64,000 bases of DNA, taken from assembly GCA_964304625.1 (NCBI GenBank), contig OZ199839.1:3195223-3259222 (forward strand), in the 5' to 3' direction. The stretch comes from Kudoa neothunni (taxonomy: Eukaryota; Animalia; Cnidaria). The position numbers and the translations under genes were made by a program. This document shows positions 661 through 25,700 of the stretch, piece by piece (position 1 is the first letter of the stretch; the number at the start of each line of letters is the position of its first letter). The notes beneath the pieces were generated by a model. It was not told where the DNA came from and ran no database searches. It saw only the letters and a list, made by a program, of their open reading frames with translations.

Positions 661-1225
661 CACGTATGGAATGATAAAATTTTATTTTAACACAGAAAAA
701 TACGTAAAAAATTATAAAAGGTTTGCATTCTGCAATATGACAAAAAATATTATCACGTGATATGATTGATATGATTAGAGGATTAACGCAATCATATAGA
801 TCATTTCGTTAAAGTTTTAAAAAGTTAATTTTGAACGTACCATAGTGTTAATTTTACCTTAAAATTATTGAAAAGTAATTTGGTAATTGAATTAGTTCAA
901 ATAAGGAAGGCGATATTAGGTTATGTAGCCAAGCAAAATATGAAATTCATATGTTGATGTTTAACAAGATTAGTCATATTTTTTATGGTATGATTTAGAG
1001 ATTATTGTAAACAACAAGGGGAAAATCAATATTTTAGGAGTTCTAAATTGGAAATTTTAAATTCTCAGTAGTGTTTGTTAGTTTTTAACAATATTAAACA
1101 AGGTTCAAACGCCCAATTAGTTAAATAAATCATCCGTTAAGGGGGTAATCTTTGAACTTCAAATGACCTTGGCCAGGCAAGGAAGCAAAATCAAAAGTAA
1201 AGCGAGGATTTTGCGCTAATGTAGA

Positions 1226-4200
1226 ATATACATATGGAGGATTAGCAGACGCATGAATTATACTTGTTGCATTTATAATGGGAACAATTACCATCAATAA
1301 TCGTTTGGGAAGGAAATACACCTCATTTTACTTGGAGGCTAATGGATGAGGATTTTTCGAATGCCGAGGATTCCTTACTATTGGAAAAAACATTTAAATG
1401 TTAGGATTTTAGTTATTTGTTTTTCTGTTAGAACATTTTATTTTAATGAATTTAATAAATTAAGGTACTCACTATATAATAAATCCTATTTTTCATTAAA
1501 TATTGCCACGTTTGATAGGAAATAATTCTTTTAATTTTTTATTAATCAAAGTATAAAATTAGCAATAAATTATTTATATATTTGATGCTATTTTTAAAAA
1601 GAATAAATTGGATTATTATACCATAATTTTTATGAATTTTGGGATTGATCTTATGGTTTTCATTTAGTTAAAGAGGATCCAGTAATCCTGTTTGAGGAGA
1701 GAGATATACATAAGCAAGGTCAATACACGGTTGTGTTAAAAATGCAAGCTGATGAAACTAACAAAGAATTCCTCAAATCAAAGATTCTAATAGGGGGACA
1801 GAATATTGTTGACGACTGTTATATTATAGACAATCCTATATACAATGACCTTTTACGTTTTTGGATAAAATCCGATTGTTTGGTCGAAGAAACTTCAATA
1901 ATAAAATATTCAATCGGAAAAGAAATTTCTTCAAGAATAAAAAAAGCACGTATAGACTTTTATAATATATTTAAACTACTTATTAAATTCTATATAGGGA
2001 TCTATAACGCTTACGGGCGGGTAAAAATTGCTCACGACCATATTATATTATATATCATACTCTCCCACTCACTTAATACTATCCACTTAATAAATATTAG
2101 AGCGAATAGTTTGTTCTCAAAGAGCGTGATATTCGAAAAAAATGTTGACAATGTTATCACATGTACTAATTATGTGTGTAAGTATAAATGTGAGGTAACC
2201 GACTCAGGAATATCATTTGACAATACTTTAATAAGAGTATCATCAGAAAAACTAAACGATATAGAAATATATCACCGAACAAGTAAATGAATTATTATAA
2301 TTTAAATTTTACCATTTATTTAGATTTTAACGAGGTATTTTATTACCAAAATGCTAAATTTATGGATGATCATGGTATAAAACTGTATTTGGATGGCTAC
2401 ACGGTTCTACCAGATTCGCATATAATCTTAAACAATGATTCCAGGATAATTGTTCCTTACCAGATTCCTGTCGAATTTATTGATCAAAAGTTTCAATGTT
2501 TGATTTCAGAGAGCAAGATTGTGAATGGAAAAAACTATTTATTTCCAGAATCTACTGTAATCATACCTCTAGGAATGAGTGGAAGTATTTTTATATAATA
2601 ATACAATATTATATGCGACTTAAAAATGTTAGTCACAAAAAAATATATCAAATTTTTCTACTTTCATTGATTTTTAATTATAACTATGAATTTTTTTATT
2701 ATTTATAGAGAGATATAGCTATGAATTGGAATATCTATGGCTCGACCAAAAACTATGTATTCTGCTGAAAATATCTTCCAAAAGAGAAATACCCACGTTA
2801 GATATCAAATATTCAATTCATGCGAATAATGAAATTCTAACTGAACCATATGTCAATCAAATCACTGTTACGCCTGAAGATAGTGAATGCTCCTTTGAGA
2901 TTGAAGGACTCGATACTGGGGTTAATTACTCGATAGAGTTATCCTCTCCCCAGCTTGAAGATTATGATCCATATATTATAAAAAATGGTACCAAAAATAC
3001 TTCCTGCTATAAAAACCAATTTAAGAATCTTCATTATAATTAATATATATTTTAGAAGCGTGTGACTTTGAAGTTACAACGCAACGTGAATCAAATGATG
3101 AAATTTTAATAGCAATAAGGAAAAAATCAAATTCTGGAACTTTAGAAATTTCCTATAGACTTTTTGAATCAGACTCTGATAATAAAGAAGCTCTTAATGA
3201 ACAAAATAAGCAGATAACCTGCACTGAACACATATGCAGTTTCAAAACACGTCCTATAACTCCCGCCAAAAATCACAATATCGTTCTAAAAATTCCGCCA
3301 TGCAATGATGATTTTAATTTAGTCATTCAAAAAGGTATTATAGAATGTTTTTTTCCGACAAACTATTTAACCTATTATTAGTCAAAAGTGATTATGGTTT
3401 CTATTACAGTTATAGAAAAGATGACGATTTAAGGGTCACAATTGTTATAGAATTAAGACTAAACCTGACATATGAAGTTATTATGGTTAACTGGAGTCTC
3501 AAGAAAAGTAAAGATTCATCAATAATTAAAAATTCAATAAAGACTTTACAAATATCGAAAGAACATGGGTGTTTTAAATTTGAAATACAAGGGGTAGAAC
3601 GTAATAACCCATATGATATCGATATTACGTCTGAAGATCTCGTGAAAAAAACCAACCAAGTATACATCCCAACATGTAAAATTTTTTAAAACTAAATGTT
3701 AATATTATTACCGACCACTTGAAATATTTAGTAAAAACCGATTATGAACAAAGAGTGGAATGGGTTAATACTCAAATATCAATTATTTTGAGTTTTGAGG
3801 AATCTGTTGGAGCTTGTAGCGCGGAAATTGAATGCATAACATTAGAAAAAATAGAAGAACAATTTATTGAAACAAATACTCAATTGTTTCACGTTGATTT
3901 CAACTGCGCTGAAAATGTTTGCGAAACTATGTTAAATGGAATAGACAGAAATTCTTATCATAGAATTAAAGTGGATTCTAATTTGATAAAAACTAAAGAA
4001 TCAGTTTTAATTGGCAAAGGTATTTACTCTAATTACATAAAAATTAAAATATATGCTATAGGTATAAGTATATTCCAAATCGAATATGAATACGATAAAG
4101 ATAATGCCATTATTATCAATTATACATTAGAAGAAGATTTTGATGAAATTTTGTTGAAATGGGATTTACATGATACTCAAGGCAACCAGGTGAAGAGTTC

Positions 4201-5158
4201 GAACGAAGCAATAGAACAGATATCGTGTAATGAGAAATTATGCCAAATGACAACGTTGGGACAACTGGATCACTCTAAAGCTTATCAATTTACGTTCGAG
4301 TCTGCTGAATTAAGTGGTACGAATGTGTTGAGAATAGAAAGTAATTACCTTATGTCATTTCAATAGATAAGTAAAAATAATTATGGTTTATTATTTTCAA
4401 TGAGTATACCCTCTGAAATTAATTTCATCCTTTCTAAAATCGGAAATTTTATGTTACTTTCCTGATAGATAAATATGTCTGGTTTAAAAATATTTATTAT
4501 TAAAAATTATAAACGACGTAAAAAATCTAATCCAACGAGAATTTTTATTATTCTGTCAATTATCTCCTTATTAATACATTGTTAATTTGTATAATTTTTC
4601 AAAACACTAAAAATTGATAAATATTTTTAAAACAAATTTTAACGATGATCCATTTTAGATATATTATGTAAATTCGTATTTTACTAATACAGTCGCTATA
4701 AGTACAGAAAATATTTTTATTATTTATATACCACAAAACAGGGGTGCACAAATTCCGGCCTCAATGAGGTTTTTAGTGGCCCGCGATCAACTCTAATTAA
4801 GTTCAAATTAATGGTATAGGTGGCCTGTTCAAAAATCATAGAGATTTTTTAAATATACAAAAAATATCCATAATCATAATCAACACACCTTTTCCAGCGA
4901 TTTTTCCAATTTTGGAAACATTAAGAAAAGTCTGTTTTATTTCAGTAATCGATGAAAATCTTCTCCCTTTTAAATGAAAATTTATCTTTGGGGACAAAAA
5001 AGTCACAAGGTGCCGAATCTGGAGAGTATGGTGGATTCTGGAGTTGATCAATATCAAAGTTAAATAAAAATCGTTGAATCTTAGTGGATGTATCAGCAGG
5101 CGTGTTATCGTAATGTAGAATCCAATTACCGTTGTTCCACATTTCAGGTCTCTTTCGG
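1226..5158 (+). repeat. Segmental duplication block 1, copy A (paralogue at 38253-42148)
   Basis: Collinear match at an offset of ~37.0 kb, from atatacatatggag to inside the mariner. Confidence 0.95.
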
Positions 5159-8100
5159 CGAATGGCGTATCTAAGGCGACGGAGAACATTTAGATAATAC
5201 TCACTGATTACTGTGCGGCTTTCAGGTGCATATTCATAATGTAGAATTCCCATAACGTCCAAAAATACGGTTAGTTAAACCTTAATTTTACTTTTAACTT
5301 GTCGCGTTTTTCTCGGTCGTGGGGATGATAGGGCCTTTCACTCGGATGATTGGATGATTGCAACTTGGTTTCTGGGCCATAGCCGTGCACCCACATCACA
5401 TCGCCGTTAATGATAGAAGACATTGATTTATCACATTCTGATACTCTTTGGAAGTGATTCCTTGAAATTTCATCACGCTTTTCTTGCTGTACTTTCGTAA
5501 GCAAACGCGGAACAAACTTGGCCGCAATTCTTCCCATTCCAGAATCATCCGTTAAAATTGCGTAATATGATCCAAATGAAATTCCCGTTTCATCGCTAAT
5601 TTCTCTTATGGTTAATCTTCTATCTGAATTAATTAAATTTTTTACAATTTTAATGAATTCAGTATTTTTGCTCGATAAGGGTTTACCATTGCGATCGTCA
5701 CTTTCAACAGATATTCTCCCCTGTTTAATTCGTCGATATCACTCATAAACTCTCGATCGACTTGTTTAAAAATGTCTCTTAAATCATATCATATGTTTCC
5801 ATACTAGTTTTTCCAAGTTTAACGCAAAACTTTATACATATCAGCTGTTCATGATTCTCAGACATTTGGTCGCGCGACATCGACTTGGATCATATCTTAC
5901 AAAATGTGTTAGAATTCTTTCAATTTTCTATCAATTTTTGTCTGATGCATAAATAATACTTATGAATATATTTTATATAGGTTTTTCTAATTTTAATATA
6001 GTTTAAACACATTTAATACATGATATTTTTTGAACAGACCACGTATTTCTAAATGAAATGAAAAAAGCATTCGATCATTTAATTTCAGTTGGTTTATGTA
6101 AATATTGAATATATCGATAACACCTAATAAAATTAATAAAAAATTTTATGTAAGATTTTGTTATGTGCGAAATATTAATAAAACTAACTCTATAGTTACA
6201 ATGATAATTTAAAAAATTGTTTTTAACCGTCGAAGGGCCGAGTGTCGAAAAATTCAGTACGTACCCATGGGGGTGGTTTTTGACCCCATCATTATTTTCT
6301 TATTTTATTTCGCAATTTACCCCAAAAGTTATTCTTGTAATTATTACTCATAACACAGCTATATTAACTACTTAGAGGTTTACTTTAGGTGGTATAAAGT
6401 TGAAAAAAATGTAACTAATTCTTCGATTAAATATTATAAACATCTGCATCAAAACGTTTGTTATTATACGGTTCAAGTATATGACTTATTGTATTTACAT
6501 TATTGAAAGTTTCTGGAAGTAAAATAACGGCGTTTAATCAAATATAGATAAGAAACGCACACAAGGGATCATACAAGATACCAGGCATGATTTCCGGGAA
6601 AAGTTGTTAATCACAAACCTGAATGCGGGGTTAAGTGTGGAACGTCGTTGTAAATATTCGGGTATGTTTATACCTTCAAAATAAACGAATCAAATATGAA
6701 AAATTCACAACAGACTTAATTAAATACAAATTACATTAATTCCGAGGTTTCCCAAAGAGAGAGTAATTTTTTCAGAGATAACATCAATCAGATTCTAAAC
6801 TACACGTCTGGCAATAAACAAAATCATTTTGAATTTGTGAAACGAACAAATAAGTTTCTTGTAGTTATAGAAACGTATATTAGTTTTTCAGTCAATATTT
6901 CGTAAACAAAACACACATCAGGATCATTCCCGTGGACCAGTTATTTCAGTGAATTAGGCTATTCACCAATATTAATACATTTATTAAATAGTTCTTAACT
7001 ATATTTTGAATGCGAATGATAATGAACCTTGAAAGTCTGGAGCAAATATTCACAGATAAGCTATGATGCCCCGCCCCTCCCCTCCCCTAAGTAGGCACAC
7101 GTACACTGACTGTAGTTTAGCCTCAAATTATTGTTGTCGTTATCAAAATGCATTTCCAAATATAAATTCCTTCTTAAATTAATCATCTAAAATTAAGCAG
7201 TATAATTCGTTTATTCCTAACGTTTAAAACACATGCAGCTGATAAATAATAATTTAATCCCATGGCGTCATCGTAATCCTTCGACAGGAAAAAGGAAAAC
7301 AACAAAATATTTACGTTAGAGAATATTCATGAGATTACAAACTTGGATTATGGTCATTTTCGCGATGACCTTGAATATACAATAAAACAATGCAAAATCT
7401 GTGTCTTATGAAGAGATATTCAAAATGTTTTTGTGGCGGTCAAATGTTTTTAGTTAAGAGAAAAGACGCTGATGATGGTTATCAATACAAATGTATTTCA
7501 TGCAACAAAAAAACGTCGATACGAAAAGGAACTATTTTCGAAATTTCTCGACTTCCTTTGTGGAAAATTTTTATTTTTATAGCAACGGTAATCCAACAAT
7601 GACGTACGATGATATTCGTAAACACACTAAAATTTCTTCAAACTCCACCATAAATAATTGGAAAAATGTCATTACGGATTTTATGGCATCTAAACTAGAT
7701 GAGGAATTTTCTAAAATAGGCGGAAAGGGTGTTGTAGTACAAATAGATAAGACCGCCATATCAAAAAGGAAGTCCAACGTTGGAAGAATTCTTCGGAATA
7801 GACGAAGACGGAAATTTCTTTTTGAAAATAACACAAAAAAGAAATAGGGATATTCTAGAAAGAATAATTGTTGAGAATGTAGAGGAAGAGTCAACTATTT
7901 GGACCGATGGTTGGAAAGGTTACAATAGTTTAAAGGATCTAGGTTTTGTTCACGGTACCGTGATCCATAAAAGAAGGTTTGTTTCCATTGGGGGGGGGGG
8001 GGGGGTCCACACTAACAAAATAGAAGCTACATGGGGGGCTTTTAAAAGAAAATATAGAAGCGCCACAAATAAAACCCCAGAAACACTTCCCAACTATGTT

Positions 8101-11100: not shown

Positions 11101-14100
11101 AAGCAAGCAAAATACAGCATCAAATTATGTTCTCAACGTTTCCATATATCTTGGCAAAAGTAGTTTTGAAGCTCTGCGACAGTGTAACGTTGGAGAAAGT
11201 AGTGCTCTTTCATTGTCATCCCCATTGTTCTATTCCGGCAGAAATATCGTAGCTGATAATTTCTTTTCATCATATTGACCTTCTTGGGAACTCTACGAAA
11301 AAACAAAAAAGAAATTCCAAATTATCTGTGTCCCTCAAAAAAAGTGAAATTTATAGGAGCAAATTGGTGTTTAACGAAAAGTTCATGTTGGTATCATACG
11401 TATGTCAGAAAGCCAAATATGTTATCTTGTTGGCTATTGGTACATCGGACAATACTATTTCGAATGAGACATTAAAGTTCAAGCCTAAAATAATGCTGGA
11501 CTACAATAAATCTAAAGGTGGTGTGGACAATGTCGATAGGATGTTGGCTTCTGTTTCTGTTCGCTGATTCACAAGAAGAAGGCCTTTAGTAGTGTTCTTC
11601 AACATGATGGATTTATCTTTAGTCAACGCCTTTGCAATATATAAAGATGTATTTAACGATGCGAAGAAGACTAGAAGCTCTTTTTTTAAAGAAATTGCAG
11701 AGAAGCTTTATAGTCCATTGCTGATGCGAAATTCATCAGAAAAGATCATTAAGAGGAAATCACCAATTCTTCCATTGATTAACAAAGTTTCACCTATTGA
11801 TGTAAAGCTTTCAAGATGTGAATATTGTGAGCGAAACAAGGACAAGAAAACTACAAAATGGCGCAAAATTTGCTATAAATTTTATTGCCCTACGCATGCC
11901 TCAAATACTTGTTGGAAATGTTATGAATAAAAATATATTTTTAATTTATATTATTTTGTTTCATTATAAAGGGTGAAACTTTTTTAATCCTGACAATAAA
12001 ACACAAACTTATGTTAAAAAATACGATCGAATGTTTACGATGAGTGTCGTACAAGTACGATTTGAACTAGTTTGGGATTAAATTACAATATTAATGTTTA
12101 TTTTAAGTTAATAAATTAAATAAAATAACTGGGATATTTTTTACCCTAAAGACTTTACACGTACATTGTTTATTTGATCCTTAGAAGGTTAAAAATACTC
12201 AACTTTACTGGAGCAATATAACGAAATTATCTTCACTTAATTCTCGAATCTAGCTCTATATGACACATAAGATTAACTAACCTCAAATTTTTATTTATCT
12301 ACGTCTTATCATATATAGAAGTGGATATGGTAGTGTATATAGAGTGGTGCGGATTTCATTTTCTCGTCAAAAGGAGGAGCAAGTCCGATTTGAATTGGGA
12401 TGCGGTGTTCTATATGCTCCAATGTATAATTAAAATCATTTCTTTTTAATTTATCTCAAATTGATAAATAACTTTTTTTATTTCTATTATGAACCTGGAT
12501 TGTTAATTTTAAAATTATGAATTAAGTAAATAACGCGTTTTTAATGAAACATAAGGTCGCGGGATTAAGAATCATTAATTTTTTGGAAGCAAATTAAAAC
12601 AATAAAATTTACTATTCCCCAATTTTTTAAATAAAAATATTAATGCTTTTAAAATATTAATTTCATCTGAGTGAAGTGGATTTTTCATACATTGAAATTA
12701 AATTTTAACGCAACCCCTAGTTAACTGGGAGGCAATTTTAAAGGATTCGAAAGAATTGGATACCAAAATGGAATTACAAACTGATGAACCATTGGTATGA
12801 TTAACTGAAATTCTCAGGATTTGAATAATGGGGAAATTTAGAATACAGAGTTGTTTATAAAAGCTTGGGATGTGGTTGTGTATCAAAAAAATGAAACTAG
12901 TAATTATATCATAAATACATATTATTGCTTATTTAAAAATTAAGCGACGAAAGATATTCCCGAAACTCAACCTACCACAGAAGAAGATGACACGTAATTA
13001 ACTTTTCGGAATATATTTTTGAATGTTAACTTTGAAGGTTTTTAAAACAAATCAATCTACTCGATAAAAACATCATGAATGTTGGTGATAATCAAGATGT
13101 GCAAACAGTTAATATAAAAATGAAGACATTCACTTCGACCCAAGCATCGGAATCGTTATATTTTTCAAAACCGTTAGATGACAAGGATATAATGGATATT
13201 GTTGAAAATTCGGAAGAAATAGACAAACCCAAAGAGGCTCTGCAATCTACCTATGTGAGCCTAGACTTTTCTGCAACCGATTCCTCAACGGAAAAGGAAT
13301 CTGCAAGCAAAATTGTGCTAGCTGTGACTAAAAACAAACAAATAAGTACCCAAGTCGAAAAGTCAAATGTTATTGCGGGTGATGTGCTCGTGGTTAAAAT
13401 ATCAAACAGCTTAAGCAAAAAGTTAAATATAACATTCAGCCAAATTGTAAAAGTGGATCCTAACAGGAGGAATTTCAGATGTTGCACCTTACATAGTATA
13501 ATCAATAAATATTCATTAAATAAATAATTTATATTTATAGGTAAAAAACTCACTTGGGAGACAAGTTATTGCTCCATATTGAGAGAGGTTACCTTGTCGA
13601 AGACACTTACAAATTACACATGTACGTGCAACCACACAACGAGCTATGCAATTATTTTCGATGTTTTCGATCAGGATTCCTCTGAAAATAAATATTACCA
13701 ACACGAAATATCATTAATATTAACATTGATTTCCCTACTTTTCCTCGTCATTACAATAATTTGTATTTTGACGTCAAAGTAATTTGAAAAATATTCTTTA
13801 TATGGATCGATTTAAATATTTTGTTGACAGAAATATTTTCAAAATGAGATCATTGGCCCAATTGTGGATGTGTGTCTCTATCTTCATGTTTCATCTTTCA
13901 TTTATCTTTGGGAATATATTCAACAATGTTCAAAGTTCTTGTTTTAATGTTGCAGTTTTTCTACATTATGCCCTTATGAGTCAATACTTTTCTTTATTTT
14001 TAAATTCGTTCTTACTGTTTAAAAATCTTGTCCTCACGATGAAAAAAATAAGCTCAATAATTATGAATATAATTGCCTTTTTGATTATAGGTAAAAATTT

Positions 14101-14690
14101 ATATTTATGTAATTTTGTAATGTTGTTATAGGGATTCCTCTGGCCATCGTAATGCTCTGCTGGAAATTTTATCGCAAATTTTACGTAAAAGATAAACAGT
14201 ATTTTTTTTCGTGATAACTAAACAATTTTTATCTGAACTATATTATAGTTGTATACCGCATGGGCCCTTAAAACTGGCAACAATAACTATTCCTGGTGCG
14301 GCGATATTATTTTTCAATTTGATAGTATTTGCGCTCGTTTTGAAGACGATATTCAGATCCGAATGCACAAAAAAGAAGAAAACCTCTATAAAACAGCGTG
14401 CAAAACAATTAATGTTCTTGTTTACTTTGCTAGGCCTTCCAATGCTTCTTCAACTGTTGTCTTCGTTTATTAAGAGTGATTTAATTATATTGGTTTCCAA
14501 TATGATAAACACTTCGATTGGAATTATCTTATTTTTCATTCTTATCGTTGGCAACAAAAAGATGAGGAAGCATATCGCCTCATCTTTCAGATCACGAACC
14601 ACCACCAAAAGGCATCTAATATCGAGTAGTAGTCACAAATCTGGCACAAGAATGATGCCATTTTCAACAAAAAATATCAGAAGACAATAA
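1668..14690 (+). CDS. Adhesion GPCR copy A (5' exons lie upstream of the window): 8 visible extracellular modules, GAIN/GPS, 7TM
   Basis: Phase-1 exons at 1668-4341 are paralogous to 38695-41370. An ~8 kb TE-filled intron follows, then exons 12319-14690 paralogous to 45773-48139, with TAA at 14690. The first exon starts at a splice acceptor (catttag|TT), not a start codon. Confidence 0.7.
4817..6045 (-). mobile_element. Full-length but defective mariner (Tc1/mariner, D,D34D) transposon
   Basis: TIRs ta(g/c)gtgg(c/t)ctgttcaaaaa at both ends, ~1.23 kb. Frameshifted transposase motifs KFVPRLLT, INGDVMWVHGYGPETK, LHYDNTPA and PPYSPDSAPCDFF. Confidence 0.92.
6223..8578. mobile_element. Probable piggyBac-type non-autonomous element hosting the Merlin insertion
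   Basis: ttaaccgtc...ggggtggtttttgacccc at the left and ...ccggaggattaa at the right resemble the other TTAA-bounded ends in this window. Confidence 0.4.
7260..8256 (+). mobile_element. Defective Merlin / IS1595(ISXO2)-like transposase
   Basis: Zn-ribbon KCFCGG...CISCNKKTSIRKGTIFE, VVVQIDKT..KRKSNVGR, TIWTDGWKGY and HGTVIH...VHTNKIEATW, split by frameshifts. Termini not resolved. Confidence 0.88.
9696..9727. repeat. (AACTT)n microsatellite
   Basis: cttaatcttaacttaacttaacttaacttaag, preceded by (TAA)n. Confidence 0.8.
10037..12188 (+). mobile_element. Full-length defective piggyBac transposon
   Basis: TTAA on both sides (10033-36, 12189-92), TIRs ccctctaaagg / ccttagaagg and internal ggggta...tacccc repeats. 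Transposase motifs VTVDEQLVSFRGRCPF, ADNFF, YNKSKGGVDNVD and a C-terminal Cys-rich domain, interrupted by stops and frameshifts. Confidence 0.93.
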
Positions 14691-17323
14691 TTTGAATTTG
14701 AAATTAATTTAAGTAGTAGAATTAGTCGTTATTAATTATTATTATTGTTAGGATTTTTTCTCTTATATTAAATTTATATGCACTGAGAAAAACCTCCAAT
14801 TTAATTGTTCTCAACAATTATTACTAAATTCAACAACGGTCATTGCGCACTTTTTTGGGGATGGCAAAAAGGTACGCAATATCCATATAATTGCGCGCGC
14901 ATGAAATATATAAAACTCAATCCTTTTCTTTAAAACGAACTGATTAATAATAATAATATGACCATCTTTCTAGATTTATTCAAACTTTAAAAGTTGAGAA
15001 TTAAGGGCAAGCTTGATCGTCTCTGTGTATCTAGAAAGGTGTTCTTTCTGAATTAGTTTTCGATAAATTTTTCTTTTAAATCTAATTTTGGGAATTAAAT
15101 TATAAACAGATTTGGATTTACCAAGGTTTCATTGGGTAAAAAAAGCAAAAGATGTACGTAAGAACCATGGCATATAGGGGTGTGCGCGTGTTTGGATTAA
15201 AGTTGTTATTTTACGTTTAATTTGATTTTGAAATTTACGATTTAATCTTATAAAATCGGCTATATTTATATTCATTTAAAAATTTTTAACAATGACGCAA
15301 TTAGATATTATTACAGTTGAAAAACGTAATGAAATATTTTTATAAAAAACGGGCTTAAAAATGTTAATTTTTAATTGTGAAGCAAAAAACATGATAACTA
15401 AATCCAAAAAATGCAATTTGTTCCAACATATTCGATTTTTAATATTATCATTTATGATATGAGGCCTGTGTTCAGAATTCAAAAAATTTTTACAATTAAA
15501 CATAGTTGTCAGTAATCAATAATGATGTTTTAGTTTATAAATTTTTTTAGCGGTTTTCTATAGCTAAATTTAAAAGATATGTAATTAATATTTGAAGATA
15601 TATACCATCGGATTTTTTAAACAGTTGTTTCCCACATTATAGTGGTATTAATCTGTACGAAATTTATAATGAAAATTATAACACCTATAATAAATTTAAT
15701 CAAAAAGGGTTAAACAGACATATTTGATTTTTTTCTATTCTACTTATTTCATCATAATAATCCAAAAATAAGTGACAGCTAAATGTCTCATTGTAGTTTT
15801 TTTCTCAAATTGTTTACAGTTTAATTCATTGACGTGAGTCTTATTTTCCTAAAGAAATATTATACTAGGAGTTACATAAAAATAAAATATTATGGATTTC
15901 AGGAAATGAAAAATAAAAATTCTTCTCCATACAGCCGTTAGATTGCGCAGACATAAAAACAAAACTTAGTAATATTTCGAAATTAATATAAAATGATTAA
16001 TTTAAAAATAATGTTATACGCGAGAGTTATCTTTTTATTACATAATTTTAATATTTTATATAAGGTCTAACGAATTTGTTCATCCATTCGCACCTATATA
16101 CACGTATCTTGCAAATTTTAAAGAATAAACACTTTAGTTTATTATTTATCAATAAAAATTGATTTTAATAGATTCATTAAATCGAAAGGAAATAAAATTT
16201 AATTATATTATTTTTACTGATTGTTGTTGGTTAGATTCTTCCAAGATTTTATTGGATCACGTATCTTTTAATCATCAATTAGATCGTTCATATTAGTCTC
16301 TCAGAGATATATGCATCAAATAAATCAATTTGTATTTAATGATTTAGCTCACAATTTTCTATATAAAATATTTAAATCTCATCCACATTTTTAACATTAT
16401 CCATTTGTCGTGGTTACATCAATAACATTAAATATAATAAAACTATTTTTTAATTTAATCAGCAATTAAAATTCTGCTGTAATGAAGAAATTTACTCTTT
16501 ATTTTTATTATTATCTATTTTATGCAATAAAATAGAGTTAATTTAACCCTTAAACAATCTAATAGTAAAAGCATACATTCAGGTGTTATCATTATAGTTT
16601 TTAATCTACGTACAGTGACCAACAATTGTAGTTTAAAATCAATGAACCTACTCAGATTTAAATAACAACATGTAATCCTGTAAGGAAACCAAAGTACTAA
16701 TTAATTTGTACACGTGAATAAAATTTTCAATTATAAAAATATTTCTATTTTTCTGTATTGACTATTAGTTCAATTTTTGCTGTTTAATAAATTAATCCTG
16801 TATCATTTTTATTAATATAAAAATAGAAAAACGTGGTGTCAAAGTTTAATTTCGTTCAACTTCTTTAACATAAAAATCACCAAATAATGATACACTTTGA
16901 TTTTGAGATATTGTTAAATTTAATGGTTGCTAAAATTAGTGCTCAATATCCATTTTTTAGCATCTATAAAAAAGATTTTCAATAAATAACTCCAAATGTT
17001 TCTTTAATAGCATATAAGATTTATAAGCTAGAACTGCATTTTAGAAAACGCCAAAATAATGACACACAATGAAAAGTGGGAAATATCCACCTATGCAATA
17101 ACCGTTGTTGACTGTATAGTAGTTGTGTTTGCATCATTTTATGTTTTAGTAAATTATTTTTCATAATTTTTTCCTGAATCTTCGGTTAATATAAAAATTA
17201 CGCGTTATATCACATTTTAGAGTAAATAACTACCGAATGTACATGTATAACATAGTTAAACTAATATTCGCCCTTGGGGGAATCAGAGTGTTTATATATC
17301 CCACAAGTGTAATTAAAAGAAAT
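12189..17323 (+). repeat. Segmental duplication block 2, copy A (paralogue at 45727-50780)
   Basis: Near-identical match at an offset of ~33.45 kb, covering GAIN/7TM exons and ~2.6 kb of 3' flank. Confidence 0.95.
12319..14690 (+). CDS. GAIN/GPS plus 7TM exons of adhesion GPCR copy A
   Basis: GPS CTCNHTTSYAIIF at ~13621-13659, followed by the same seven helices as copy B. C-tail ends ...FSTKNIRRQ*. Confidence 0.9.
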
Positions 17324-19194: not shown

Positions 19195-19733
19195 TGCTTT
19201 AGTTAGCTTTAGAGAGAACAAAGTTATTTTTATGAACTTTTTAGTATAAAGTTATAGTAAAAATTTTTATTTAGTGATCTACAGACTCGATCTAACTTGT
19301 TAGTGAGTTTTTCAATCATCCAGATTGACGTATCTTTTTTGATTCACACATTGTTAGGATTCCTCGTGATATTATGCTTTTTGCTTAACGTGTGACTTCA
19401 ATAGCAAAATAAAAATTTCCTTAATTTAACAGATATGGTTTAATTTTTAATATATAATATTTTCCTGTTGGTGTATTTAAGGGGAATGCATTGAGTTAAA
19501 TCTCAGATGGGTGTTTTCACCCGAGAATTGTAAGAGTGAATATCGACATGTATTATATGATCGTGAGGATTTAGTTTAATTTGTCAATTATATTGAAATT
19601 GGTATAATTAGAAATAATAATGAGGTATTATTGATTCACACATAAACATATTATTTAATTTTCTATTAGCACCACGACGTAAATCAATTCAGTGAGCAAC
19701 TTGATATATTGGATAATTATTATCGATAAGATA

Positions 19734-22700
19734 ATGTTACTTTTTTCGTTAGTAACTACACTAGTAATTTTTGTTCCTGGTAACGTTTCTATATTAATTA
19801 AAAATAGTTTTTTAATCTATCCCAACAAAATTTTTCAGATATTTATGCAAATATATCTGTAAGACGTTGCAATATTAATCACACGTATAAACCTAGCTTG
19901 AATGTATTGGATGTTTGGTTGGAGCTTACACAACCATTAAAATACGTTGAAATTGGTTGGAAGTTAGTTGACTCATTGGAAGGAACCACCGTTCGATTAT
20001 CTAGGAAAAGTCTGATAAAATGTGACACTGACAATATATGTGGCATGTCGATTTACGACGTGAACAGGCTGAGATCATATTTTTTGTTTGTTGATACAGA
20101 GGTTTGTGTATCATATGGAGCGTTGAAAATATATCGACGTGAGTTTAGTTTTGTAAATTGCGTCGAAATGAAAATTACAATATTTTAGAACCTGAAAATA
20201 ATGTTATCGATTATACAATTAACGGAGAATCGAGAATAATTTTCAAAAGTGATTTATTTAATCACAAAAAATATATTTGTCACATTTTAATCAAAAATAT
20301 TGTCTATCAATCTAATACTGAAACCAAATCTGAATCGATTTATGGTTATTGTGACGAACCATCATACCAAATTCCACCTAATGCCATTACAATTAATTTA
20401 TCAGTTCAAATGATGGATATGATTTATCCAACCGATTTAGTTATAAAAAGTGATACATAAACTCTTTTTAAGATTAATGATAATTTTTAGCCAATCATTT
20501 CAAGGAAAACTCACTTGTGTTTGATACAAAACCCACAGGAGAATTTCATATAATTTTGAATGGATTAGAAATTGAGCAAAATAACTTGTATATGATTGAA
20601 AATTACTTTACTGATCCAAAAGAACTTTATATGACTACAGAAGAAACTTTATGCTCTAAACAACCAGTTGAAGGTGATAAAATAAAGTTTACGTGCAGAT
20701 CACCTCATGGTGACTTTCTTAATTTCAAATTGGAGAACGAAAACAGCAAAACTAATTTAATGCGTTCTACAAAATTTAGTATAGAAGCTTTTTTGTTTTT
20801 GTGTATAATAATATATTTTATAGTCGATAAGAGTCAATTTTTTAATGTGATAGAAGAATTTCATCGCTTTAAAATTGTTGCCAATAGTGGCACGACCATG
20901 CAGCAAGTAGAATATGTGTTGGATGAGTTATCCGACAACAAATTGGTACGTAGATTCATTTGTAGAATAAAAAATAAAAGTGGATGTGTTGGATTGTTCA
21001 TCGACAATATGATCATTTTTGAAAAAGATTTCCTCAAGTCATATAAACTGCTCTTGTCGTATGGAAGCTCCCATTGGGAAGTAACTTCCGAATGGAACTC
21101 ATCACTGTTTAAGGTTCATTATGCTGTTGAAAAAAATAAAATGACTATTTGGTCAAATATACCTGAAGATTATCAAATCAGTTGTGTGTACACATTGGTG
21201 AGGGTTGACACTTTCTTGGATGGTTATAATAACGCTGGAACATACGACACGTACGGATCTTTATCGCATGATGGCTATAAATCGTGCAACAACTATACAA
21301 TCGATCTCTCCACGACTACGCCGAATTCGTTGCACATATATATCCCCCAAATGAATTATCTTTACACTATTAGAAATCTTTATGAAAAATTAAATTTTAA
21401 TGTGGTGAGAAGTCAAGAGGGTATAAAAATAAATACCAACTTCAACGATGAATATTGGTCTTACAAGTTTGTCAATAATGAGGAGATTCTAAATATGGAA
21501 TATATGAATCGGAATAAAATGGTAACGGCTGATACATACGTCAAATGTGATTCAAAAATTTCACTCCCTGAACCTGATATCGCCCCTACTGGACTATATC
21601 TTAAATTGGCGGTTCCTGGCAATATTTTCTATGTTGATTTATTCTACAGTATTTGATTTGGTTTTAGTGATCTGAATATTAAATTTCTTACTCATTATAA
21701 AATTAGACGATGAGAAACTAGATGCCAGTATTGATGATTCTACACCTAACATATTCAGTATCAATATCCAACTCCCTCTAGATAAAGATCTCATAAAGCA
21801 TATCGTAGTATATCAGATTGATGGAGATAGACAAAAATCGCCTTATATATGTTTCAGATGTGAAAATGATTGTTCGGACAACCTAAAGATAGAAAATAAT
21901 GTTGGCGTATTAAGCATAGGTTTGATATTTGCAAGAACTGTTTATCTAGAGATACTATTGAAGAATGATAGGACAATGAATAAAGTGCTCCACTTACGTA
22001 TGAGAATATAAGCGTTTATTATATTTGTATGGTTGGATAATTTAGCCGATATTCGTGTTAACTATGATCTCAGATGGTCTGATGATGCTTTTGATATATT
22101 GCCAATGAAAAACGTTAACCAGTATGAGTACTGCGATTTCATTATTAGCTCCAACGAGAAATCTAATAAAGATAGAAAAACTAAATTATTATATGTTGAT
22201 AAATGCAACAAAAAAGTTAGGACGCTTCGAGGACTGTATGATGAAAATCACATCTCAGTGTACAACAGAATGCGACTGCTTTTCAAAACTTCCTTCAACA
22301 TATGTATGCAATAATTATATTACTGCGATTAAACTAAGACTTAACTATTCGGGATTATTATTCTACTAATAAGTTTATATAACAGCATAACAAATGGATT
22401 CAATCCCCCCAAAATAAAGGTTTATCTATGATTCTTAGGTAAAAGCGTAAATCAATCTACAAATTTCAAAAATTTACATATATATCAATTTTAATAGAAA
22501 ATCGGTTGGGCATTGATTGCTAGGGGTTAAGACGGTTCGGTTTCGGTTCAACATTTCGGGTTTGTAATTAATTTTTCCAATTATCGATGTCAATTTTTTT
22601 TCATGAAAAAAATATGTAAAAATGTGATTGGTCGAAATTTTATTTTAATCGTTCTTTGTTTAAAAATACTCTTTAAATCCAAATTTTGAATTATTGTACA

Positions 22701-25700
22701 ATAGAATTAAATTATATATTAGTTTTTATTGTTTTAATTAATTTTATTATTTAATGTTGTTTGTTATTACCTCTAAAAACGATTATAAATATTTTAATAT
22801 TAAATTCTTTAAAACGCACTATGAAAAATTCTATAGTTCAAATTTCAATTTAGTTATTTCTATTTTCATAAATGAACACAATAGTTTCAAGTTTCGAGTG
22901 GCTCAATTTTGTTCTCAACGGGGAAATAGCACGGTTGCATAAGGTAAACATCTGTCTGCGTCAATGCTCGTAGGTCTAACGTTAGAAAGAGTTTTACAAA
23001 CCCTTTCTAAATGATCTGGCATCACACCGTGATTAATAAGATTGGTAATTTCGTTAAATGCTAACAATATTTTGTTTTGTTTGGTCTGGGAAGGTGATTT
23101 ATCAAATTGTCTAAATTTATCTCAGATTCGGAAGGTTTATAATTTTGGATTTGATCATTCAGTTCAATGAAATTAACTGCGTCTTCTAGCTCCAAATTTA
23201 TTATCTTTTGTAGAAAATATTCTTTATACAACTGTTTAAATCGATTCTTAAAAATATAAATATATCGGACCAAACGGTGCGTAGTTCAAAGAAGCATTTG
23301 ATAAATTTCATTTTTAAAATTTCTGAAATGGATCCATCAATATATGAGAAGTCCTCGATTGTATCAGTGAGTATGAGTCACATTCATTACATTTTGCTCT
23401 TTTATTAGAAAGACTAACAAAATAGCCCCAAATACCTGATACAATTCCTGTAATACTAAATACAAAATTTATTCCCTGTTAAAACACGTCATTCAAAAAT
23501 ATTTATTGCCCTTTTTCTATTTTAAAACCGCGTTTACTTATTTAAGACTGTAAGAATTAATAATAAAAGCTAATTTCTATTAATTAAAAAATAAATTTTC
23601 AAAACCGACTGTTAAACACCTAACCGATCTTAACCCCTATTGGTTACTTGATAACAAAATCGAAAAATCACGATATGTAGTTTTATGAAACAATTCTTAC
23701 ACTGTTTACACGTTTTCAAATAAAAAGCACATATTTGTAGAGATATACGAAGCATTATCCTTTATCCATTATATATATAAAACTGAGTTGTCCGCAGGGG
23801 TGTGATCCCTAAGTACGCATGAACGGAAAAAGTTTTTACATATAGATAAATATCTATGTAACTGTTAATAGTTTAAGGTAATTTAAAAATTATCTCAATT
23901 GTTATCACACTGACAAAAATTCAAAATTAATGTAGGAAATTGTGTTGTCCTCGACGCTAGGTTTCTTAAGCGGATTACGTAGTTTCAATAATAGGATTAT
24001 ATCTATCGATTCATGGCGACATTTGTCTATACTGCACTTCTGCGAGTTGTTTTGAACGTTCTTAATGGTTCACTCTTAAACTATATATCCACGAGTTCAT
24101 GATAAATTATATATCGTTTATCTATCTGTATATTTAAAGTAGATGTATCCACTTGGATGTGTGCTTAAATACATTCCGTATTTTTTGAGCTTTTAATATA
24201 TTTGGCTTTATTAGTACACTTTAAAAGTATTATAGGTGGCATTTAATATAGCAAAAATATGAAAATTTTCTAAATTAATGAAGAATTACAAACGTATGTT
24301 GTAATCGGATGGATTCAATCCTTACATATTGAAACTAGGTTCCCGAATTTCATTATAACGACTGTTAGACTTAATTTTGAACGATCCAATTTAATATATA
24401 GATTGAAATCTTACTTTATCCAGTTATTTAAATATTTTTGTTCAAATTAAGAGGCTATACAGCGGTTTTGAGGAAAGAGTGTATATAAATGTGTCGGATA
24501 GAGATATTAATTTGAGCAATATAAACTAATCATCGTAAGTTATTATCGAGTTATTCAGGTTTTTCCACTGAATAATCTCTTCAAAATGATCTCAGTTTTT
24601 TACTGTGCCCATCACAGTCGTTAAAAGTATGATATTTAAAAAAATGTACTCAATTTCTCCTATGAGCTAATCAAGAGTCTTAATTTCTTTATTTTTTGAC
24701 CGTAAATATCTATGATGAAATATTCCCAATCCCGTACGAAGCTGGGCTGTTCGCGCTAATATTTAATAAGCAATACAAATAAAATCCCTAAAATTATAAT
24801 TTTTATACGGTTATAAAAATATAAATAAATAGAAAAAAATATAACTGTTATACTATTAATTTAATAATTATTCAAATAAATAATACTTCTCGGATATTTA
24901 CATAGTCAAAAGTATACACTGGGTAATCGATGATATGCAATTTAATTAATAAAATATATTATAGTTTATACTAGCGCTAATTCTCAGCTTTGCCAGGCAC
25001 TATATGATGGAAAATTTTAACATTTAGTTTTATTTTTGAATGGAGAAATTCTACGTAATATTCAATTAAATTAGCGCGCTAAACCCTGTAAATTTTATTG
25101 TTCTATTTTAAGTGTTGTTTTTTATAGCTTGTCATTATTTTTGCAATGTGATGATTTTGGTAAATGAATTTATGCGCGCATTTTCCATTCAAATATAAAG
25201 AGGTATTGGGAGAAATTAATGAGTATTTTTAAGTTTATTTTACAAATTAGTGACAAAAAATATAATGGCCATAATTTAATGGGAAATGTAATTAACGATT
25301 ACAGTTTAGTTATTTATTAAAAAACGTCATTAAATAGCTTAAATAGTACATTCAGTTCTTTGCAAAATTTTGCGATAAAAATTAATCCTCTGATTACAAA
25401 ATTTATTATGATGGTGACTATTCGCATTCCCGCGCTGCATGCGCGGAGGATAAAAGCATTGCCTCTATTCGTGCTTTTTCTCTTGTATTAGTTGTTGCAG
25501 AAAAACGCTAATAGCCAAAAACGATAAATAATGTTTTTCGAACCATGAATATAATGATAAAAATATTTTTTTCTACCTTTTAATAATCAACGCAGTTTTT
25601 TAATTGTTTTAGTCCTCCTTTTACTTTAATGGAACGAAAATTGAAATTATATGAGCTAGAATTCTTTCCATTTGGTTGATTTATGGAAAATGTGGTTTTA

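What the first reader, a model, noticed from the sequence alone, without database searches (positions are those of the whole stretch)
1998..2282. One hypervariable exon: about half the residues differ between paralogues while neighbours are nearly identical
The 285-nt exon at 1998-2282 and its counterpart at 39026-39310 differ at about 48 of 95 residues by hand alignment, with no indels or stops and the C-x4-C hairpin retained (TCTNYVC vs ICRSLVC). The exon at 3056-3334 differs from its counterpart by about one residue, and the upstream intron looks more conserved than this exon. A coding exon more divergent than nearby non-coding DNA suggests diversifying selection on a ligand- or host-contact domain, or conversion from a third paralogue.
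Basis: partly seen in the sequence, partly recalled or inferred. Interest (0 to 1): 0.82.

Follow-up and report, generated by a model that had tools for sequence, protein, structure and literature searches.

The report
Old unconverted tract between tandem receptor paralogues
Two neighbouring copies of a giant adhesion-receptor-like gene in a fish-parasite genome are kept almost identical by copying DNA between them, and the "hypervariable exon" is a 350-base stretch that kept its old divergence, with silent sites and the adjoining intron changed as much as the protein, so it is not evidence of selection for variability.

Summary
Exon 1998-2282 and its counterpart 39026-39310 differ at 48 of 94 full codons, with no indels or stops and both cysteines kept. 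Exon 3056-3334 differs by one residue.

The selection reading does not hold.
- Synonymous divergence in the exon is as high as non-synonymous (dS 0.45, dN 0.42, ratio 0.93). dS is 0.05 in the rest of this 3.9-kb block.
- The divergent tract is not the exon. It runs about 1901-2255, covering the last 50 nt of the upstream exon (84% identity), the upstream intron (79%, against 90% in other introns) and most of the exon. It stops 27 nt before the exon's end.
- Against two further paralogues on another chromosome, this exon is no more divergent than its neighbours (about 72%). Those two paralogues are 99% identical to each other here.

The two genes are 34-37 kb tandem units. Their exon blocks are 99-99.75% identical. 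The spacers between blocks are non-homologous or only 63-79% alike.

Best reading: an old duplication homogenised by gene conversion, with a few sharply bounded patches left unconverted or imported from an unseen donor. The genes look like adhesion GPCRs (GPS motif plus 7TM) with orphan Ig-like domains, in what is almost certainly Kudoa neothunni. The mechanism is ordinary in an undescribed family.

The parts
1998..2282 (+). Focal exon ('exon B') of paralogue c2a. 285 nt, frame from 2000. Encodes one 7-strand Ig/FN3-like beta-sandwich domain with a C-x4-C hairpin.
   Evidence: Translation. AG/GT borders read. AlphaFold2 model with pLDDT 89.8 and 7 strands. Generic Ig-like fold matches.
39026..39310 (+). 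Counterpart exon B of paralogue c2b. 48 of 94 residues differ from c2a.
1901..2255 (+). Divergent tract P2 in c2a (c2b counterpart about 38928-39283). It covers the end of exon A, the intron 1951-1997 and most of exon B, at about 70-84% identity, flanked by 97-99% sequence.
   Evidence: Sliding identity. 20-nt difference counts. Per-segment counts.
2491..2610 (+). Second divergent tract P3: the 3' third of exon C plus the start of the next intron (c2b about 39519-39638). 64.9% identity in the coding part; dN 0.56, dS 0.26, ratio 2.2, not significant.
1220..5163 (+). The 'island' block of c2a, homologous to 38247-42154 in c2b. It is a fine mosaic of 98-100%, about 90% and 62-75% segments. Holds exons A-G, each an Ig-like module, and a shared mariner fragment.
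   Evidence: Self-BLAST. MAFFT profile. Exon translations.
38247..42154 (+). Island block of c2b.
3056..3334 (+). Exon E of c2a (c2b 40085-40363). One nucleotide and one residue differ. It lies in an identical run of 3026-3348 broken by a single mismatch.
12282..17322 (+). 3' block of c2a, 99.1% identical to 45736-50778. Holds the GPS-motif exon (13528-13779) and the 7TM exons (13772-14128, 14196-14687).
   Evidence: GPS PF01825 scores 26.1 bits against a cut-off of 22.5. 7tm_2 gives weak collinear hits. The best PDB sequence hits are all adhesion GPCRs, E 0.05-0.3.
45736..50778 (+). 3' block of c2b (GPS plus 7TM). Differences cluster in the cytoplasmic tail at 47936-48142.
19262..22456 (+). 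5' exon block 1 of c2b, 99.75% identical to c2a sequence 11.6-14.8 kb upstream of the window.
27270..33674 (+). 5' exon block 2 of c2b, 99.0% identical to c2a sequence 0.6-7 kb upstream of the window. 41 of its 62 differences lie in the two 200-nt bins 27870-28269.
27939..28075 (+). Sharply bounded divergent patch P1 inside an exon. About 28% divergence over 137 nt, with difference-free sequence for at least about 140 nt upstream and 150 nt downstream. dN 0.36, dS 0.19.
   Evidence: No third copy in the genome.
22456..27270 (+). Spacer S1 of c2b (a large intron). Only collinear remnants at 88%, 79%, 63% and 65% identity match the c2a spacer; the rest is non-homologous.
42528..44192 (+). Extra module in c2b: four exons that are a 73%-identical internal repeat of exons D-G. 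Absent from c2a, which has 7.1 kb of transposon-rich DNA instead.

Best explanation
The two exons belong to two old tandem paralogues (c2a, c2b; units of 34-37 kb) of a giant adhesion-GPCR-like gene. Its ectodomain is a string of exon-sized Ig/FN3-like modules.

Repeated gene conversion between the copies has homogenised the exon-bearing blocks to 99-100%, with some older conversions now at about 90%. A few short stretches were never overwritten and still carry the original divergence. That divergence is about as deep as the split from the chromosome-1 paralogues. The tract about 1901-2255, which includes most of exon 1998-2282, is the largest of these relics; 2491-2610 is another.

Within the relic, the protein has evolved as this ectodomain does everywhere. 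Hydrophobic core columns and the Cys pair are kept, and surface and loop positions change freely (ratio about 1).

Shown:
- the mosaic of identity levels;
- tract borders that ignore exon borders;
- dS equal to dN in the tract;
- uniform divergence against the chromosome-1 copies;
- diverged or non-homologous spacers;
- no donor in the assembly.

Inferred:
- gene conversion as the homogenising process;
- the tract is a relic rather than an import;
- whether selection helps to keep it unconverted.
For: 1. Identity along the block falls into three classes: 98-100%, about 90% and 62-75%. Segments are 100-400 nt long and the pattern is significantly non-random.
2. In exon B's 5' part, dS is 0.45 and dN 0.42. 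The other island exons give dS 0.053 and dN 0.040. In the 7TM exon the ratio is 0.32.
3. The tract includes the upstream intron (78.7%) and the last 50 nt of exon A (84%), and ends before the exon does.
4. In the tract, c2a/c2b identity (67.5% nt) equals c2/c1 identity (64-70%). Outside it, c2a/c2b is 92-98% while c2/c1 stays at 68-73%.
5. A 5-taxon ML tree of the exon is an unresolved trichotomy.
6. When the 48 differences are polarised with c1, 11 are c2a-derived, 16 are c2b-derived and 21 differ three ways.
7. Upstream exon blocks are 99.0-99.75% identical. The spacers between blocks have no homology, or collinear remnants decaying 88, 79, 63, 65% from a block edge. A recent 34-kb duplication would have left those spacers at 99%.
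8. Other sharp patches exist in the 99% blocks, at 27939-28075 and in the C-tail.
9. Differences avoid columns that are hydrophobic in all copies (10 of 37 against 38 of 57, p=3e-4) and favour loops (p=0.03). All four copies keep the frame open; an open 94-codon frame at this base composition has a chance of about 3e-4 (own calculation).
Against: - No conversion event is observed directly, and no population or sister-species data were available.
- The relic model needs every other exon block to have been converted, some over more than 3-6 kb, which is long for single conversion tracts. Unequal crossing-over or several events must be assumed.
- Patches of 137-350 nt are themselves the size of single conversion tracts, which fits an import from a diverged donor equally well locally.
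- The assembly comes from low-coverage reads recovered from host data (PMC12239612), so a donor could be missing.
- A ratio near 1, and 2.2 or 1.9 in two small patches (not significant), leaves room for some positive selection.
Confidence: 0.55

Rival explanations
1. Import. The two units are near-identical, and a short conversion tract copied a diverged exon-B region (and other patches) into one copy. The donor was a third paralogue that is lost or missing from the assembly.
For: - Patch sizes (137, about 350 and about 120 nt) match single conversion tracts and have sharp edges next to 97-100% sequence.
- By synonymous distance, the c2b branch in the tract is as long as the c1 branch (0.32 against 0.35), while c2a's is short (0.13). 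That is what is expected if c2b received foreign sequence.
- The family has at least 10 GPS-bearing loci in tandem arrays, and the assembly is from low coverage (PMC12239612).
Against: - No donor was found. The best non-self matches are 70-74% nt and 49-55% aa for exon B, and none at all for patch 27939-28075.
- Several donors of different divergence would be needed to explain the 90% and the 67% segments.
- It does not explain the diverged or non-homologous spacers.
Confidence: 0.2
2. Diversifying (positive) selection accelerated amino-acid change in this exon after a recent duplication, because the domain contacts a ligand or the host.
For: - Half the residues differ while the fold-defining residues are kept. 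Differences are enriched in loops and non-core columns.
- Point estimates of the ratio exceed 1 in two small patches: exon C 3' at 2.2 and patch 27936-28076 at 1.9.
- The gene is a surface receptor of a parasite.
Against: - The ratio is 0.93 with dS 0.45 in the exon.
- Intron and neighbouring-exon sequence are equally diverged.
- Exon B is not faster than other exons against the c1 copies.
- Acceleration after a recent split predicts c2-c1 distances well above the flanks, but c2a-c1 is 0.30 against 0.27-0.32 in the flanks.
- The c1a/c1b pair shows no variability here (98.9% identity, ratio 0.1).
- None of the ratios above 1 is significant.
Confidence: 0.1
3. Neutral decay. One copy is a pseudogene (c2a has 7 kb of transposons where c2b has four more exons), and the tract simply drifted.
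For: - The ratio is about 1 across the ectodomain (0.76-1.2).
- c2a lacks the 42528-44192 module and carries mariner, ISXO2-like and piggyBac insertions in 5163-12282.
Against: - All exons of both copies are open.
- Core columns and cysteines are conserved.
- Drift cannot produce a 350-nt patch at 30% divergence next to 98-100% sequence.
- The 7TM exon is under purifying selection (ratio 0.32, p=0.009).
Confidence: 0.05
4. Assembly artefact. The two 'paralogues' are two haplotypes of one locus placed in tandem, so the tract is allelic polymorphism.
For: The source paper reports residual haplotypic duplication and low coverage for this genome (PMC12239612).
Against: - There is no N anywhere in the 64-kb window or the 40 kb upstream, so both units lie in one contig.
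- Three multi-kb structural differences separate the units.
- The same tandem arrangement occurs for c1a/c1b and for a triple at C2:10.48-10.53 Mb.
Confidence: 0.04

Closest known systems
Concerted evolution of tandem duplicates with islands that escape gene conversion (own knowledge: human RHD/RHCE, red/green opsins, MHC and KIR genes; theory by Innan and Teshima)
   Same: Near-identical paralogues with sharply bounded segments of much older divergence. Tract borders are independent of exon borders. Synonymous and intron sites are diverged along with non-synonymous ones.
   Different: The gene family, the host lineage (a myxozoan parasite) and the scale differ: 34-kb units with non-homologous intron spacers. 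No evidence yet shows that selection maintains the island.
Adhesion GPCRs (class B2; e.g. ADGRL/latrophilin, ADGRG, ADGRF, ADGRE)
   Same: A GPS motif immediately before TM1 (Pfam GPS above its cut-off). Seven hydrophobic segments whose weak matches to 7tm_2 and to solved adhesion GPCRs are collinear. A very long modular ectodomain.
   Different: The ectodomain modules match no Pfam family. They have one weak relative among 1.84 billion proteins. The 7TM similarity is below curated thresholds. The GAIN domain was not detected by sequence.
Mosaic surface-protein families in this same genome noted by earlier agents of this scan (s1-687414, s1-682521, s1-687395)
   Same: Disulfide-stapled FN3/Ig-like modules, tandem paralogues and patchwork identity attributed to gene conversion.
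   Different: Those notes describe single-pass membrane proteins. Here the modules are fused to a GPS plus 7TM end. Here no donor for the divergent patch is identifiable, whereas they report identifiable donors.
Hypervariable recognition domains under diversifying selection (own knowledge: MHC peptide-binding region, Hydractinia Alr, Dictyostelium tgrB1/C1, Plasmodium var)
   Same: An extracellular Ig-like domain with about 50% residue differences between close relatives, and a conserved scaffold.
   Different: The defining signature is absent here: there is no dN greater than dS restricted to coding sites and recurring across family members.

Membership tests
Gene-conversion mosaic / concerted evolution between paralogues | Sharply bounded segments of contrasting identity, more clustered than chance | tested here: met
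   74 differences against a permutation maximum of 40 in 228 nt; identical runs of 208-209 nt against a maximum of 136.
Gene-conversion mosaic / concerted evolution between paralogues | Segment borders independent of exon borders; non-coding and synonymous sites share the segment's divergence | tested here: met
   intron 78.7%, end of exon A 84%, end of exon B 96%; dS 0.45 in the tract against 0.053 elsewhere.
Gene-conversion mosaic / concerted evolution between paralogues | Paralogues older than their high-identity blocks suggest (diverged flanks or spacers) | tested here: met
   spacers are non-homologous or 63-79% collinear; exon blocks are 99-99.75% identical.
Gene-conversion mosaic / concerted evolution between paralogues | Identified donor for an imported tract | tested here: not met
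   Searches found no closer copy in the assembly. This feature is needed only for the import variant.
Domain under diversifying selection | dN/dS significantly above 1 in the variable region | tested here: not met
   ratio 0.93 (p=0.86). Pooled tracts give 1.21 (p=0.49).
Domain under diversifying selection | Excess divergence confined to coding sequence and recurring in other family members | tested here: not met
   the intron is included in the tract; c1a/c1b are 98.9% identical here, and c2-c1 divergence is uniform across exons.
Domain under diversifying selection | Substitutions on the exposed surface | tested here: inconclusive
   differences avoid hydrophobic columns (p=3e-4) and favour loops (p=0.03). 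Neutral surface drift gives the same pattern.
Adhesion GPCR (class B2) | GPS motif directly upstream of TM1 | tested here: met
   PF01825 scores 26.1 bits against a cut-off of 22.5 on 13528-13779. The Cys-x-Cys-x-His-Thr-Thr motif is followed by a hydrophobic segment.
Adhesion GPCR (class B2) | Secretin-like 7TM domain (PF00002) | tested here: inconclusive
   two exons hit 7tm_2 at collinear profile positions 30-119 and 160-239, but with 12-13 bits against a cut-off of 20.6; the best PDB hits are adhesion GPCRs at E 0.05-0.3. The exons were searched apart and the joined protein was not built.
Adhesion GPCR (class B2) | GAIN domain and autoproteolysis | not tested
   Pfam gave nothing on 13036-13524. 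No fold was made of that exon. Cleavage needs an experiment.
Ig/FN3-like beta-sandwich module | Seven-strand two-sheet sandwich | tested here: met
   pLDDT 89.8, 7 strands; matches to Ig-like, FN3 and macroglobulin domains with TM 0.5-0.72; only one hit has E<0.001.
Ig/FN3-like beta-sandwich module | Sequence membership in a curated family (fn3, I-set, etc.) | tested here: not met
   no Pfam family near its cut-off.

The most novel reading that the evidence does not exclude
The unconverted patches are not accidents. These are the exon-B domain, the end of the exon-C domain, and an upstream domain at 27939-28075. Selection against homogenisation would keep these particular Ig-like modules different between neighbouring receptor copies. 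A myxozoan parasite would then hold a small set of adhesion-GPCR-like receptors with distinct binding specificities, while conversion keeps the rest of each gene identical. That would be a specificity-cassette arrangement in a lineage-specific receptor family.
Probability: 0.2. Interest if true: 0.6.

Novelty: new member of a known kind. Interest (0 to 1): 0.3.

Why it matters
For the scan, this is a caution. A coding exon far more divergent than its neighbours between paralogues looks like diversifying selection. Here it is what remains after gene conversion erased divergence everywhere else, and dS, intron identity and an outgroup paralogue settle it.

Biologically, it documents concerted evolution in tandem arrays of a giant adhesion-GPCR-like family with orphan Ig-like modules. 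The genome is a myxozoan (very likely Kudoa neothunni), and I found no description of such receptors for this group. If the unconverted modules turn out to be held apart by selection, they would mark the ligand- or host-contact parts of these receptors.

Tried and rejected
- Frame as given (1998 / 39026) is full of stops. The true frame starts at 2000 / 39028.
- The first four-way alignment used the chromosome-1 loci in the wrong orientation and was meaningless. It was redone with reverse complements.
- Pfam on all ectodomain exons gave nothing near the cut-offs.
- The profile search of 1.84 billion proteins gave one weak hit, P0001, a 136-aa-repeat protein from a JGI sample record (3300018854), E 9e-6.
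- The word-based protein search with c2b exon B gave nothing. It was not repeated for c2a.
- Donor searches by DNA and protein in the genome gave none closer than the chromosome-1 copies.
- Nematode and arthropod cuticle families were absent, but neither family rang in any of the 14 control genomes, so the blanks are uninformative and those guesses were simply dropped.
- Rfam and tRNA scans of the window found nothing relevant.
It was redone from references.
All searches, folds and dN/dS were done exon by exon.
- Solvent-exposure mapping on the model was not possible because coordinates are not exposed. Strand/loop and hydrophobic-column proxies were used instead.
- Biopython's YN00 failed on most segments. 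NG86 was re-implemented with counts and Fisher tests.
Full report
**What is at the coordinates**

The window has 29% G+C and no N. The stretch 1220-5163 is repeated at 38247-42154, and 12282-17322 is repeated at 45736-50778.

Shifted by two bases (2000-2281 and 39028-39309), both exons are open for 94 codons. The borders are AG|GG / AG|GA acceptors and A|GTAAAT donors. The exon is 285 nt, and phase-1 introns lie on both sides.

The two peptides differ at 48 of 94 positions. There are no gaps, and both cysteines of the C-x4-C motif are kept. The exon at 3056-3334 differs from its counterpart by a single non-synonymous base. So the core observation is correct.

**What the gene is**

Each unit ends in three exons.
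- The first carries a GPS motif: Pfam PF01825, 26.1 bits against a cut-off of 22.5. The sequence is Cys-x-Cys-x-His-Thr-Thr followed by the first hydrophobic segment.
- The other two carry six more hydrophobic segments. They hit Pfam 7tm_2 weakly but collinearly, at profile positions 30-119 and 160-239 with 12-13 bits, below the cut-off.
- Their best matches among solved structures are all adhesion GPCRs: ADGRE1, ADGRG2, ADGRF1 and ADGRL3, E 0.05-0.3.

Upstream lie at least 15 exons of about 90-100 codons, or multiples of that, and none matches a Pfam family.

The focal exon, folded with its four paralogues as the alignment, gives a confident seven-strand beta-sandwich (pLDDT 89.8). The two cysteines sit at the turn between strands 43-56 and 59-65. 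Foldseek returns only generic Ig-like, FN3 and macroglobulin-type domains.

A profile of the exon found one weak relative among 1.84 billion proteins. It is a 136-aa-repeat protein from a JGI sample record (3300018854).

The genome has at least 10 GPS-bearing loci, several of them in tandem arrays. I therefore read the genes as adhesion-GPCR-like receptors with a lineage-specific modular ectodomain. The 7TM membership is not proven by score.

**Which organism**

G000 has 40,260,978 bases in 4 contigs, and contig 2 is 12,040,071 bases. The Kudoa neothunni assembly recovered from yellowfin-tuna reads is described as follows (PMC12239612):
- 40.2 Mb;
- scaffold N50 12.0 Mb;
- three chromosome scaffolds plus a circular mitochondrial genome.

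Earlier agents of this scan reached the same identification. I take it as almost certain. Nematode and arthropod cuticle families were not found, but those searches rang in no control genome either, so they say nothing.

**Is the exon hypervariable?**

A global alignment of the two island blocks gives three identity classes in segments of 100-400 nt: 98-100%, about 90% and 62-75%.
- Identical runs of 208-209 nt exceed the permutation maximum of 136.
- The densest 228-nt window holds 74 differences against a permutation maximum of 40.

The divergent segment around the focal exon is not the exon.

| Segment | Identity |
|---|---|
| Exon A, 1664-1900 | 98.3% |
| Exon A, last 50 nt | 84% (p=1e-4 against the rest of exon A) |
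| Upstream intron, 1951-1997 | 78.7% |
| Exon B, 1998-2255 | 69.8% |
| Exon B, last 27 nt | 96% |
| Other four introns, pooled | 90.2% |

The upstream intron is not significantly different from the exon (p=0.48), and it is lower than the other introns pooled (p=0.04). A second tract, 2491-2610, behaves the same way (64.9% identity).

**dN and dS**

I used Nei-Gojobori counts.

| Region | Counts | dS | dN | Ratio | p |
|---|---|---|---|---|---|
| Exon B, codons 1-75 | Sd 15.8/46.7, Nd 57.2/178.3 | 0.45 | 0.42 | 0.93 | 0.86 |
| All island exons outside the tracts | | 0.053 | 0.040 | | |
| Pooled tracts | | 0.35 | 0.42 | 1.21 | 0.49 |
| Last 7TM exon | | | | 0.32 | 0.009 |

Synonymous divergence is thus raised eight-fold or more in the tract, just as non-synonymous divergence is. 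Point estimates above 1 occur in two small patches: exon C 3' at 2.2 and 27936-28076 at 1.9. Neither is significant.

**Outgroup paralogues**

Two more copies lie 27 kb apart on contig 1 (c1a, c1b). Against them every exon of c2a and c2b is 68-73% identical. Exon B is at 71.6% for c2a and 67.4% for c2b, so it is not a fast exon in the family.

In the tract, c2a/c2b identity (67.5%) equals c2/c1 identity (64-70%). A maximum-likelihood tree with a fifth, distant copy as root leaves c2a, c2b and c1 as a trichotomy. Of the 48 residue differences, 11 are c2a-derived, 16 are c2b-derived and 21 differ in all three lineages.

By synonymous distance, the c2b branch (0.32) is as long as the c1 branch (0.35). 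The c1a/c1b pair is 98.9% identical in this exon, with ratio 0.1.

No copy closer than these exists in the assembly, by DNA or protein.

**How old is the duplication?**

I fetched the 40 kb upstream of the window. The c2b 5' exon blocks 19262-22456 and 27270-33674 match c2a sequence there at 99.75% and 99.0%. The 3' blocks match at 99.1%. The units are 34-37 kb and adjacent.

The three spacers between the blocks are large introns with different transposons. They share nothing, except at one block edge. There, collinear remnants decay from 88% to 79%, 63% and 65%.

A recent 34-kb duplication would have left the ancestral intron sequence at 99%. It did not. The simplest history is an old tandem duplication whose exon-bearing blocks are repeatedly homogenised.

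The 99% blocks also contain sharp patches. One is a 137-nt patch at 27939-28075 with 28% divergence, between difference-free flanks that extend at least about 140 nt upstream and 150 nt downstream. The other is a cluster in the cytoplasmic tail at 47936-48142. The first has no third copy in the genome.

**Interpretation**

The focal exon is mostly a relic of the old divergence that conversion has not overwritten. Less likely, it is an import from a donor that is lost or missing from this low-coverage assembly.

Inside the tract, changes avoid columns that are hydrophobic in all copies (10 of 37 against 38 of 57, p=3e-4). They favour loops over strands (23 of 35 against 25 of 59, p=0.03). All copies keep the frame. 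So the domain is functional, and its surface is free to change, as in the rest of this ectodomain (ratio 0.6-1.2).

Nothing here shows positive selection. Selection against homogenisation of particular modules remains possible, and I give it about 0.2.

**Limits**

- No sister-species sequence was reachable.
- The number of sequences (four or five) is too small for site models.

**Verdict**

The selection reading is not supported. The mechanism is ordinary concerted evolution with an unconverted or imported tract, in an undescribed receptor family of a myxozoan parasite.

Noticed in passing
window 27939-28075 (c2a counterpart 6.2-6.3 kb upstream of the window, L012:3689-3825): A 137-nt patch with about 28% divergence sits inside a 6.4-kb block that is otherwise 99.7% identical. 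Its edges are razor-sharp and it lies inside an exon. The c2a version lacks the second cysteine. No third copy exists in the genome.
   Followed up: partly
window 14482-14690 and 47936-48142: Differences between the 99% 3' blocks cluster in the cytoplasmic tail after TM7. The two copies end differently, with the c2b stop two codons earlier.
   Followed up: partly
window 42528-44192: c2b carries a second set of four module exons, 73% identical to exons D-G (2690-4363 / 39714-41392). c2a has none; in its place are 7.1 kb (5163-12282) holding mariner, ISXO2-like (7390-8232) and piggyBac (10327-11930) transposase remnants and a tRNA-Ser(GGA)-like sequence at 9761-9855.
   Followed up: partly
window 4396-5163 and 41388-42154: A mariner-type transposase fragment on the minus strand is shared by both copies at 96% identity, just after exon G. 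So it predates the last homogenisation of this block.
   Followed up: no
window 26422-26696, 36321-36633, 59461-59770 (inverted): A relatively G+C-rich repeat of 275-310 nt is present three times at 91-93% identity. It is probably a short mobile element. There is no Rfam or tRNA match.
   Followed up: no
G000:C2:10479301-10533801; C1:15957706-16006508; C2:6081254-6086524 (L009): There are at least 10 loci with a GPS motif in the genome. They include a triple tandem array with 25-29 kb spacing and the chromosome-1 pair. The L009 copy has the same exon order (A, B, C-like exons) at about 35% residue identity.
   Followed up: partly
P0001 / L014 (JGI sample 3300018854): This is the only outside relative of the exon-B module. 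It is a 608-aa protein made of 136-aa repeats with a similar 'GRVK...YII' strand and a C-x4-C hairpin, E 9e-6. Its source organism is unknown.
   Followed up: partly
window 52042-52221 / 53339-53518: An inverted repeat of about 180 nt at 81-84% identity, 1.1 kb apart, lies downstream of c2b.
   Followed up: no
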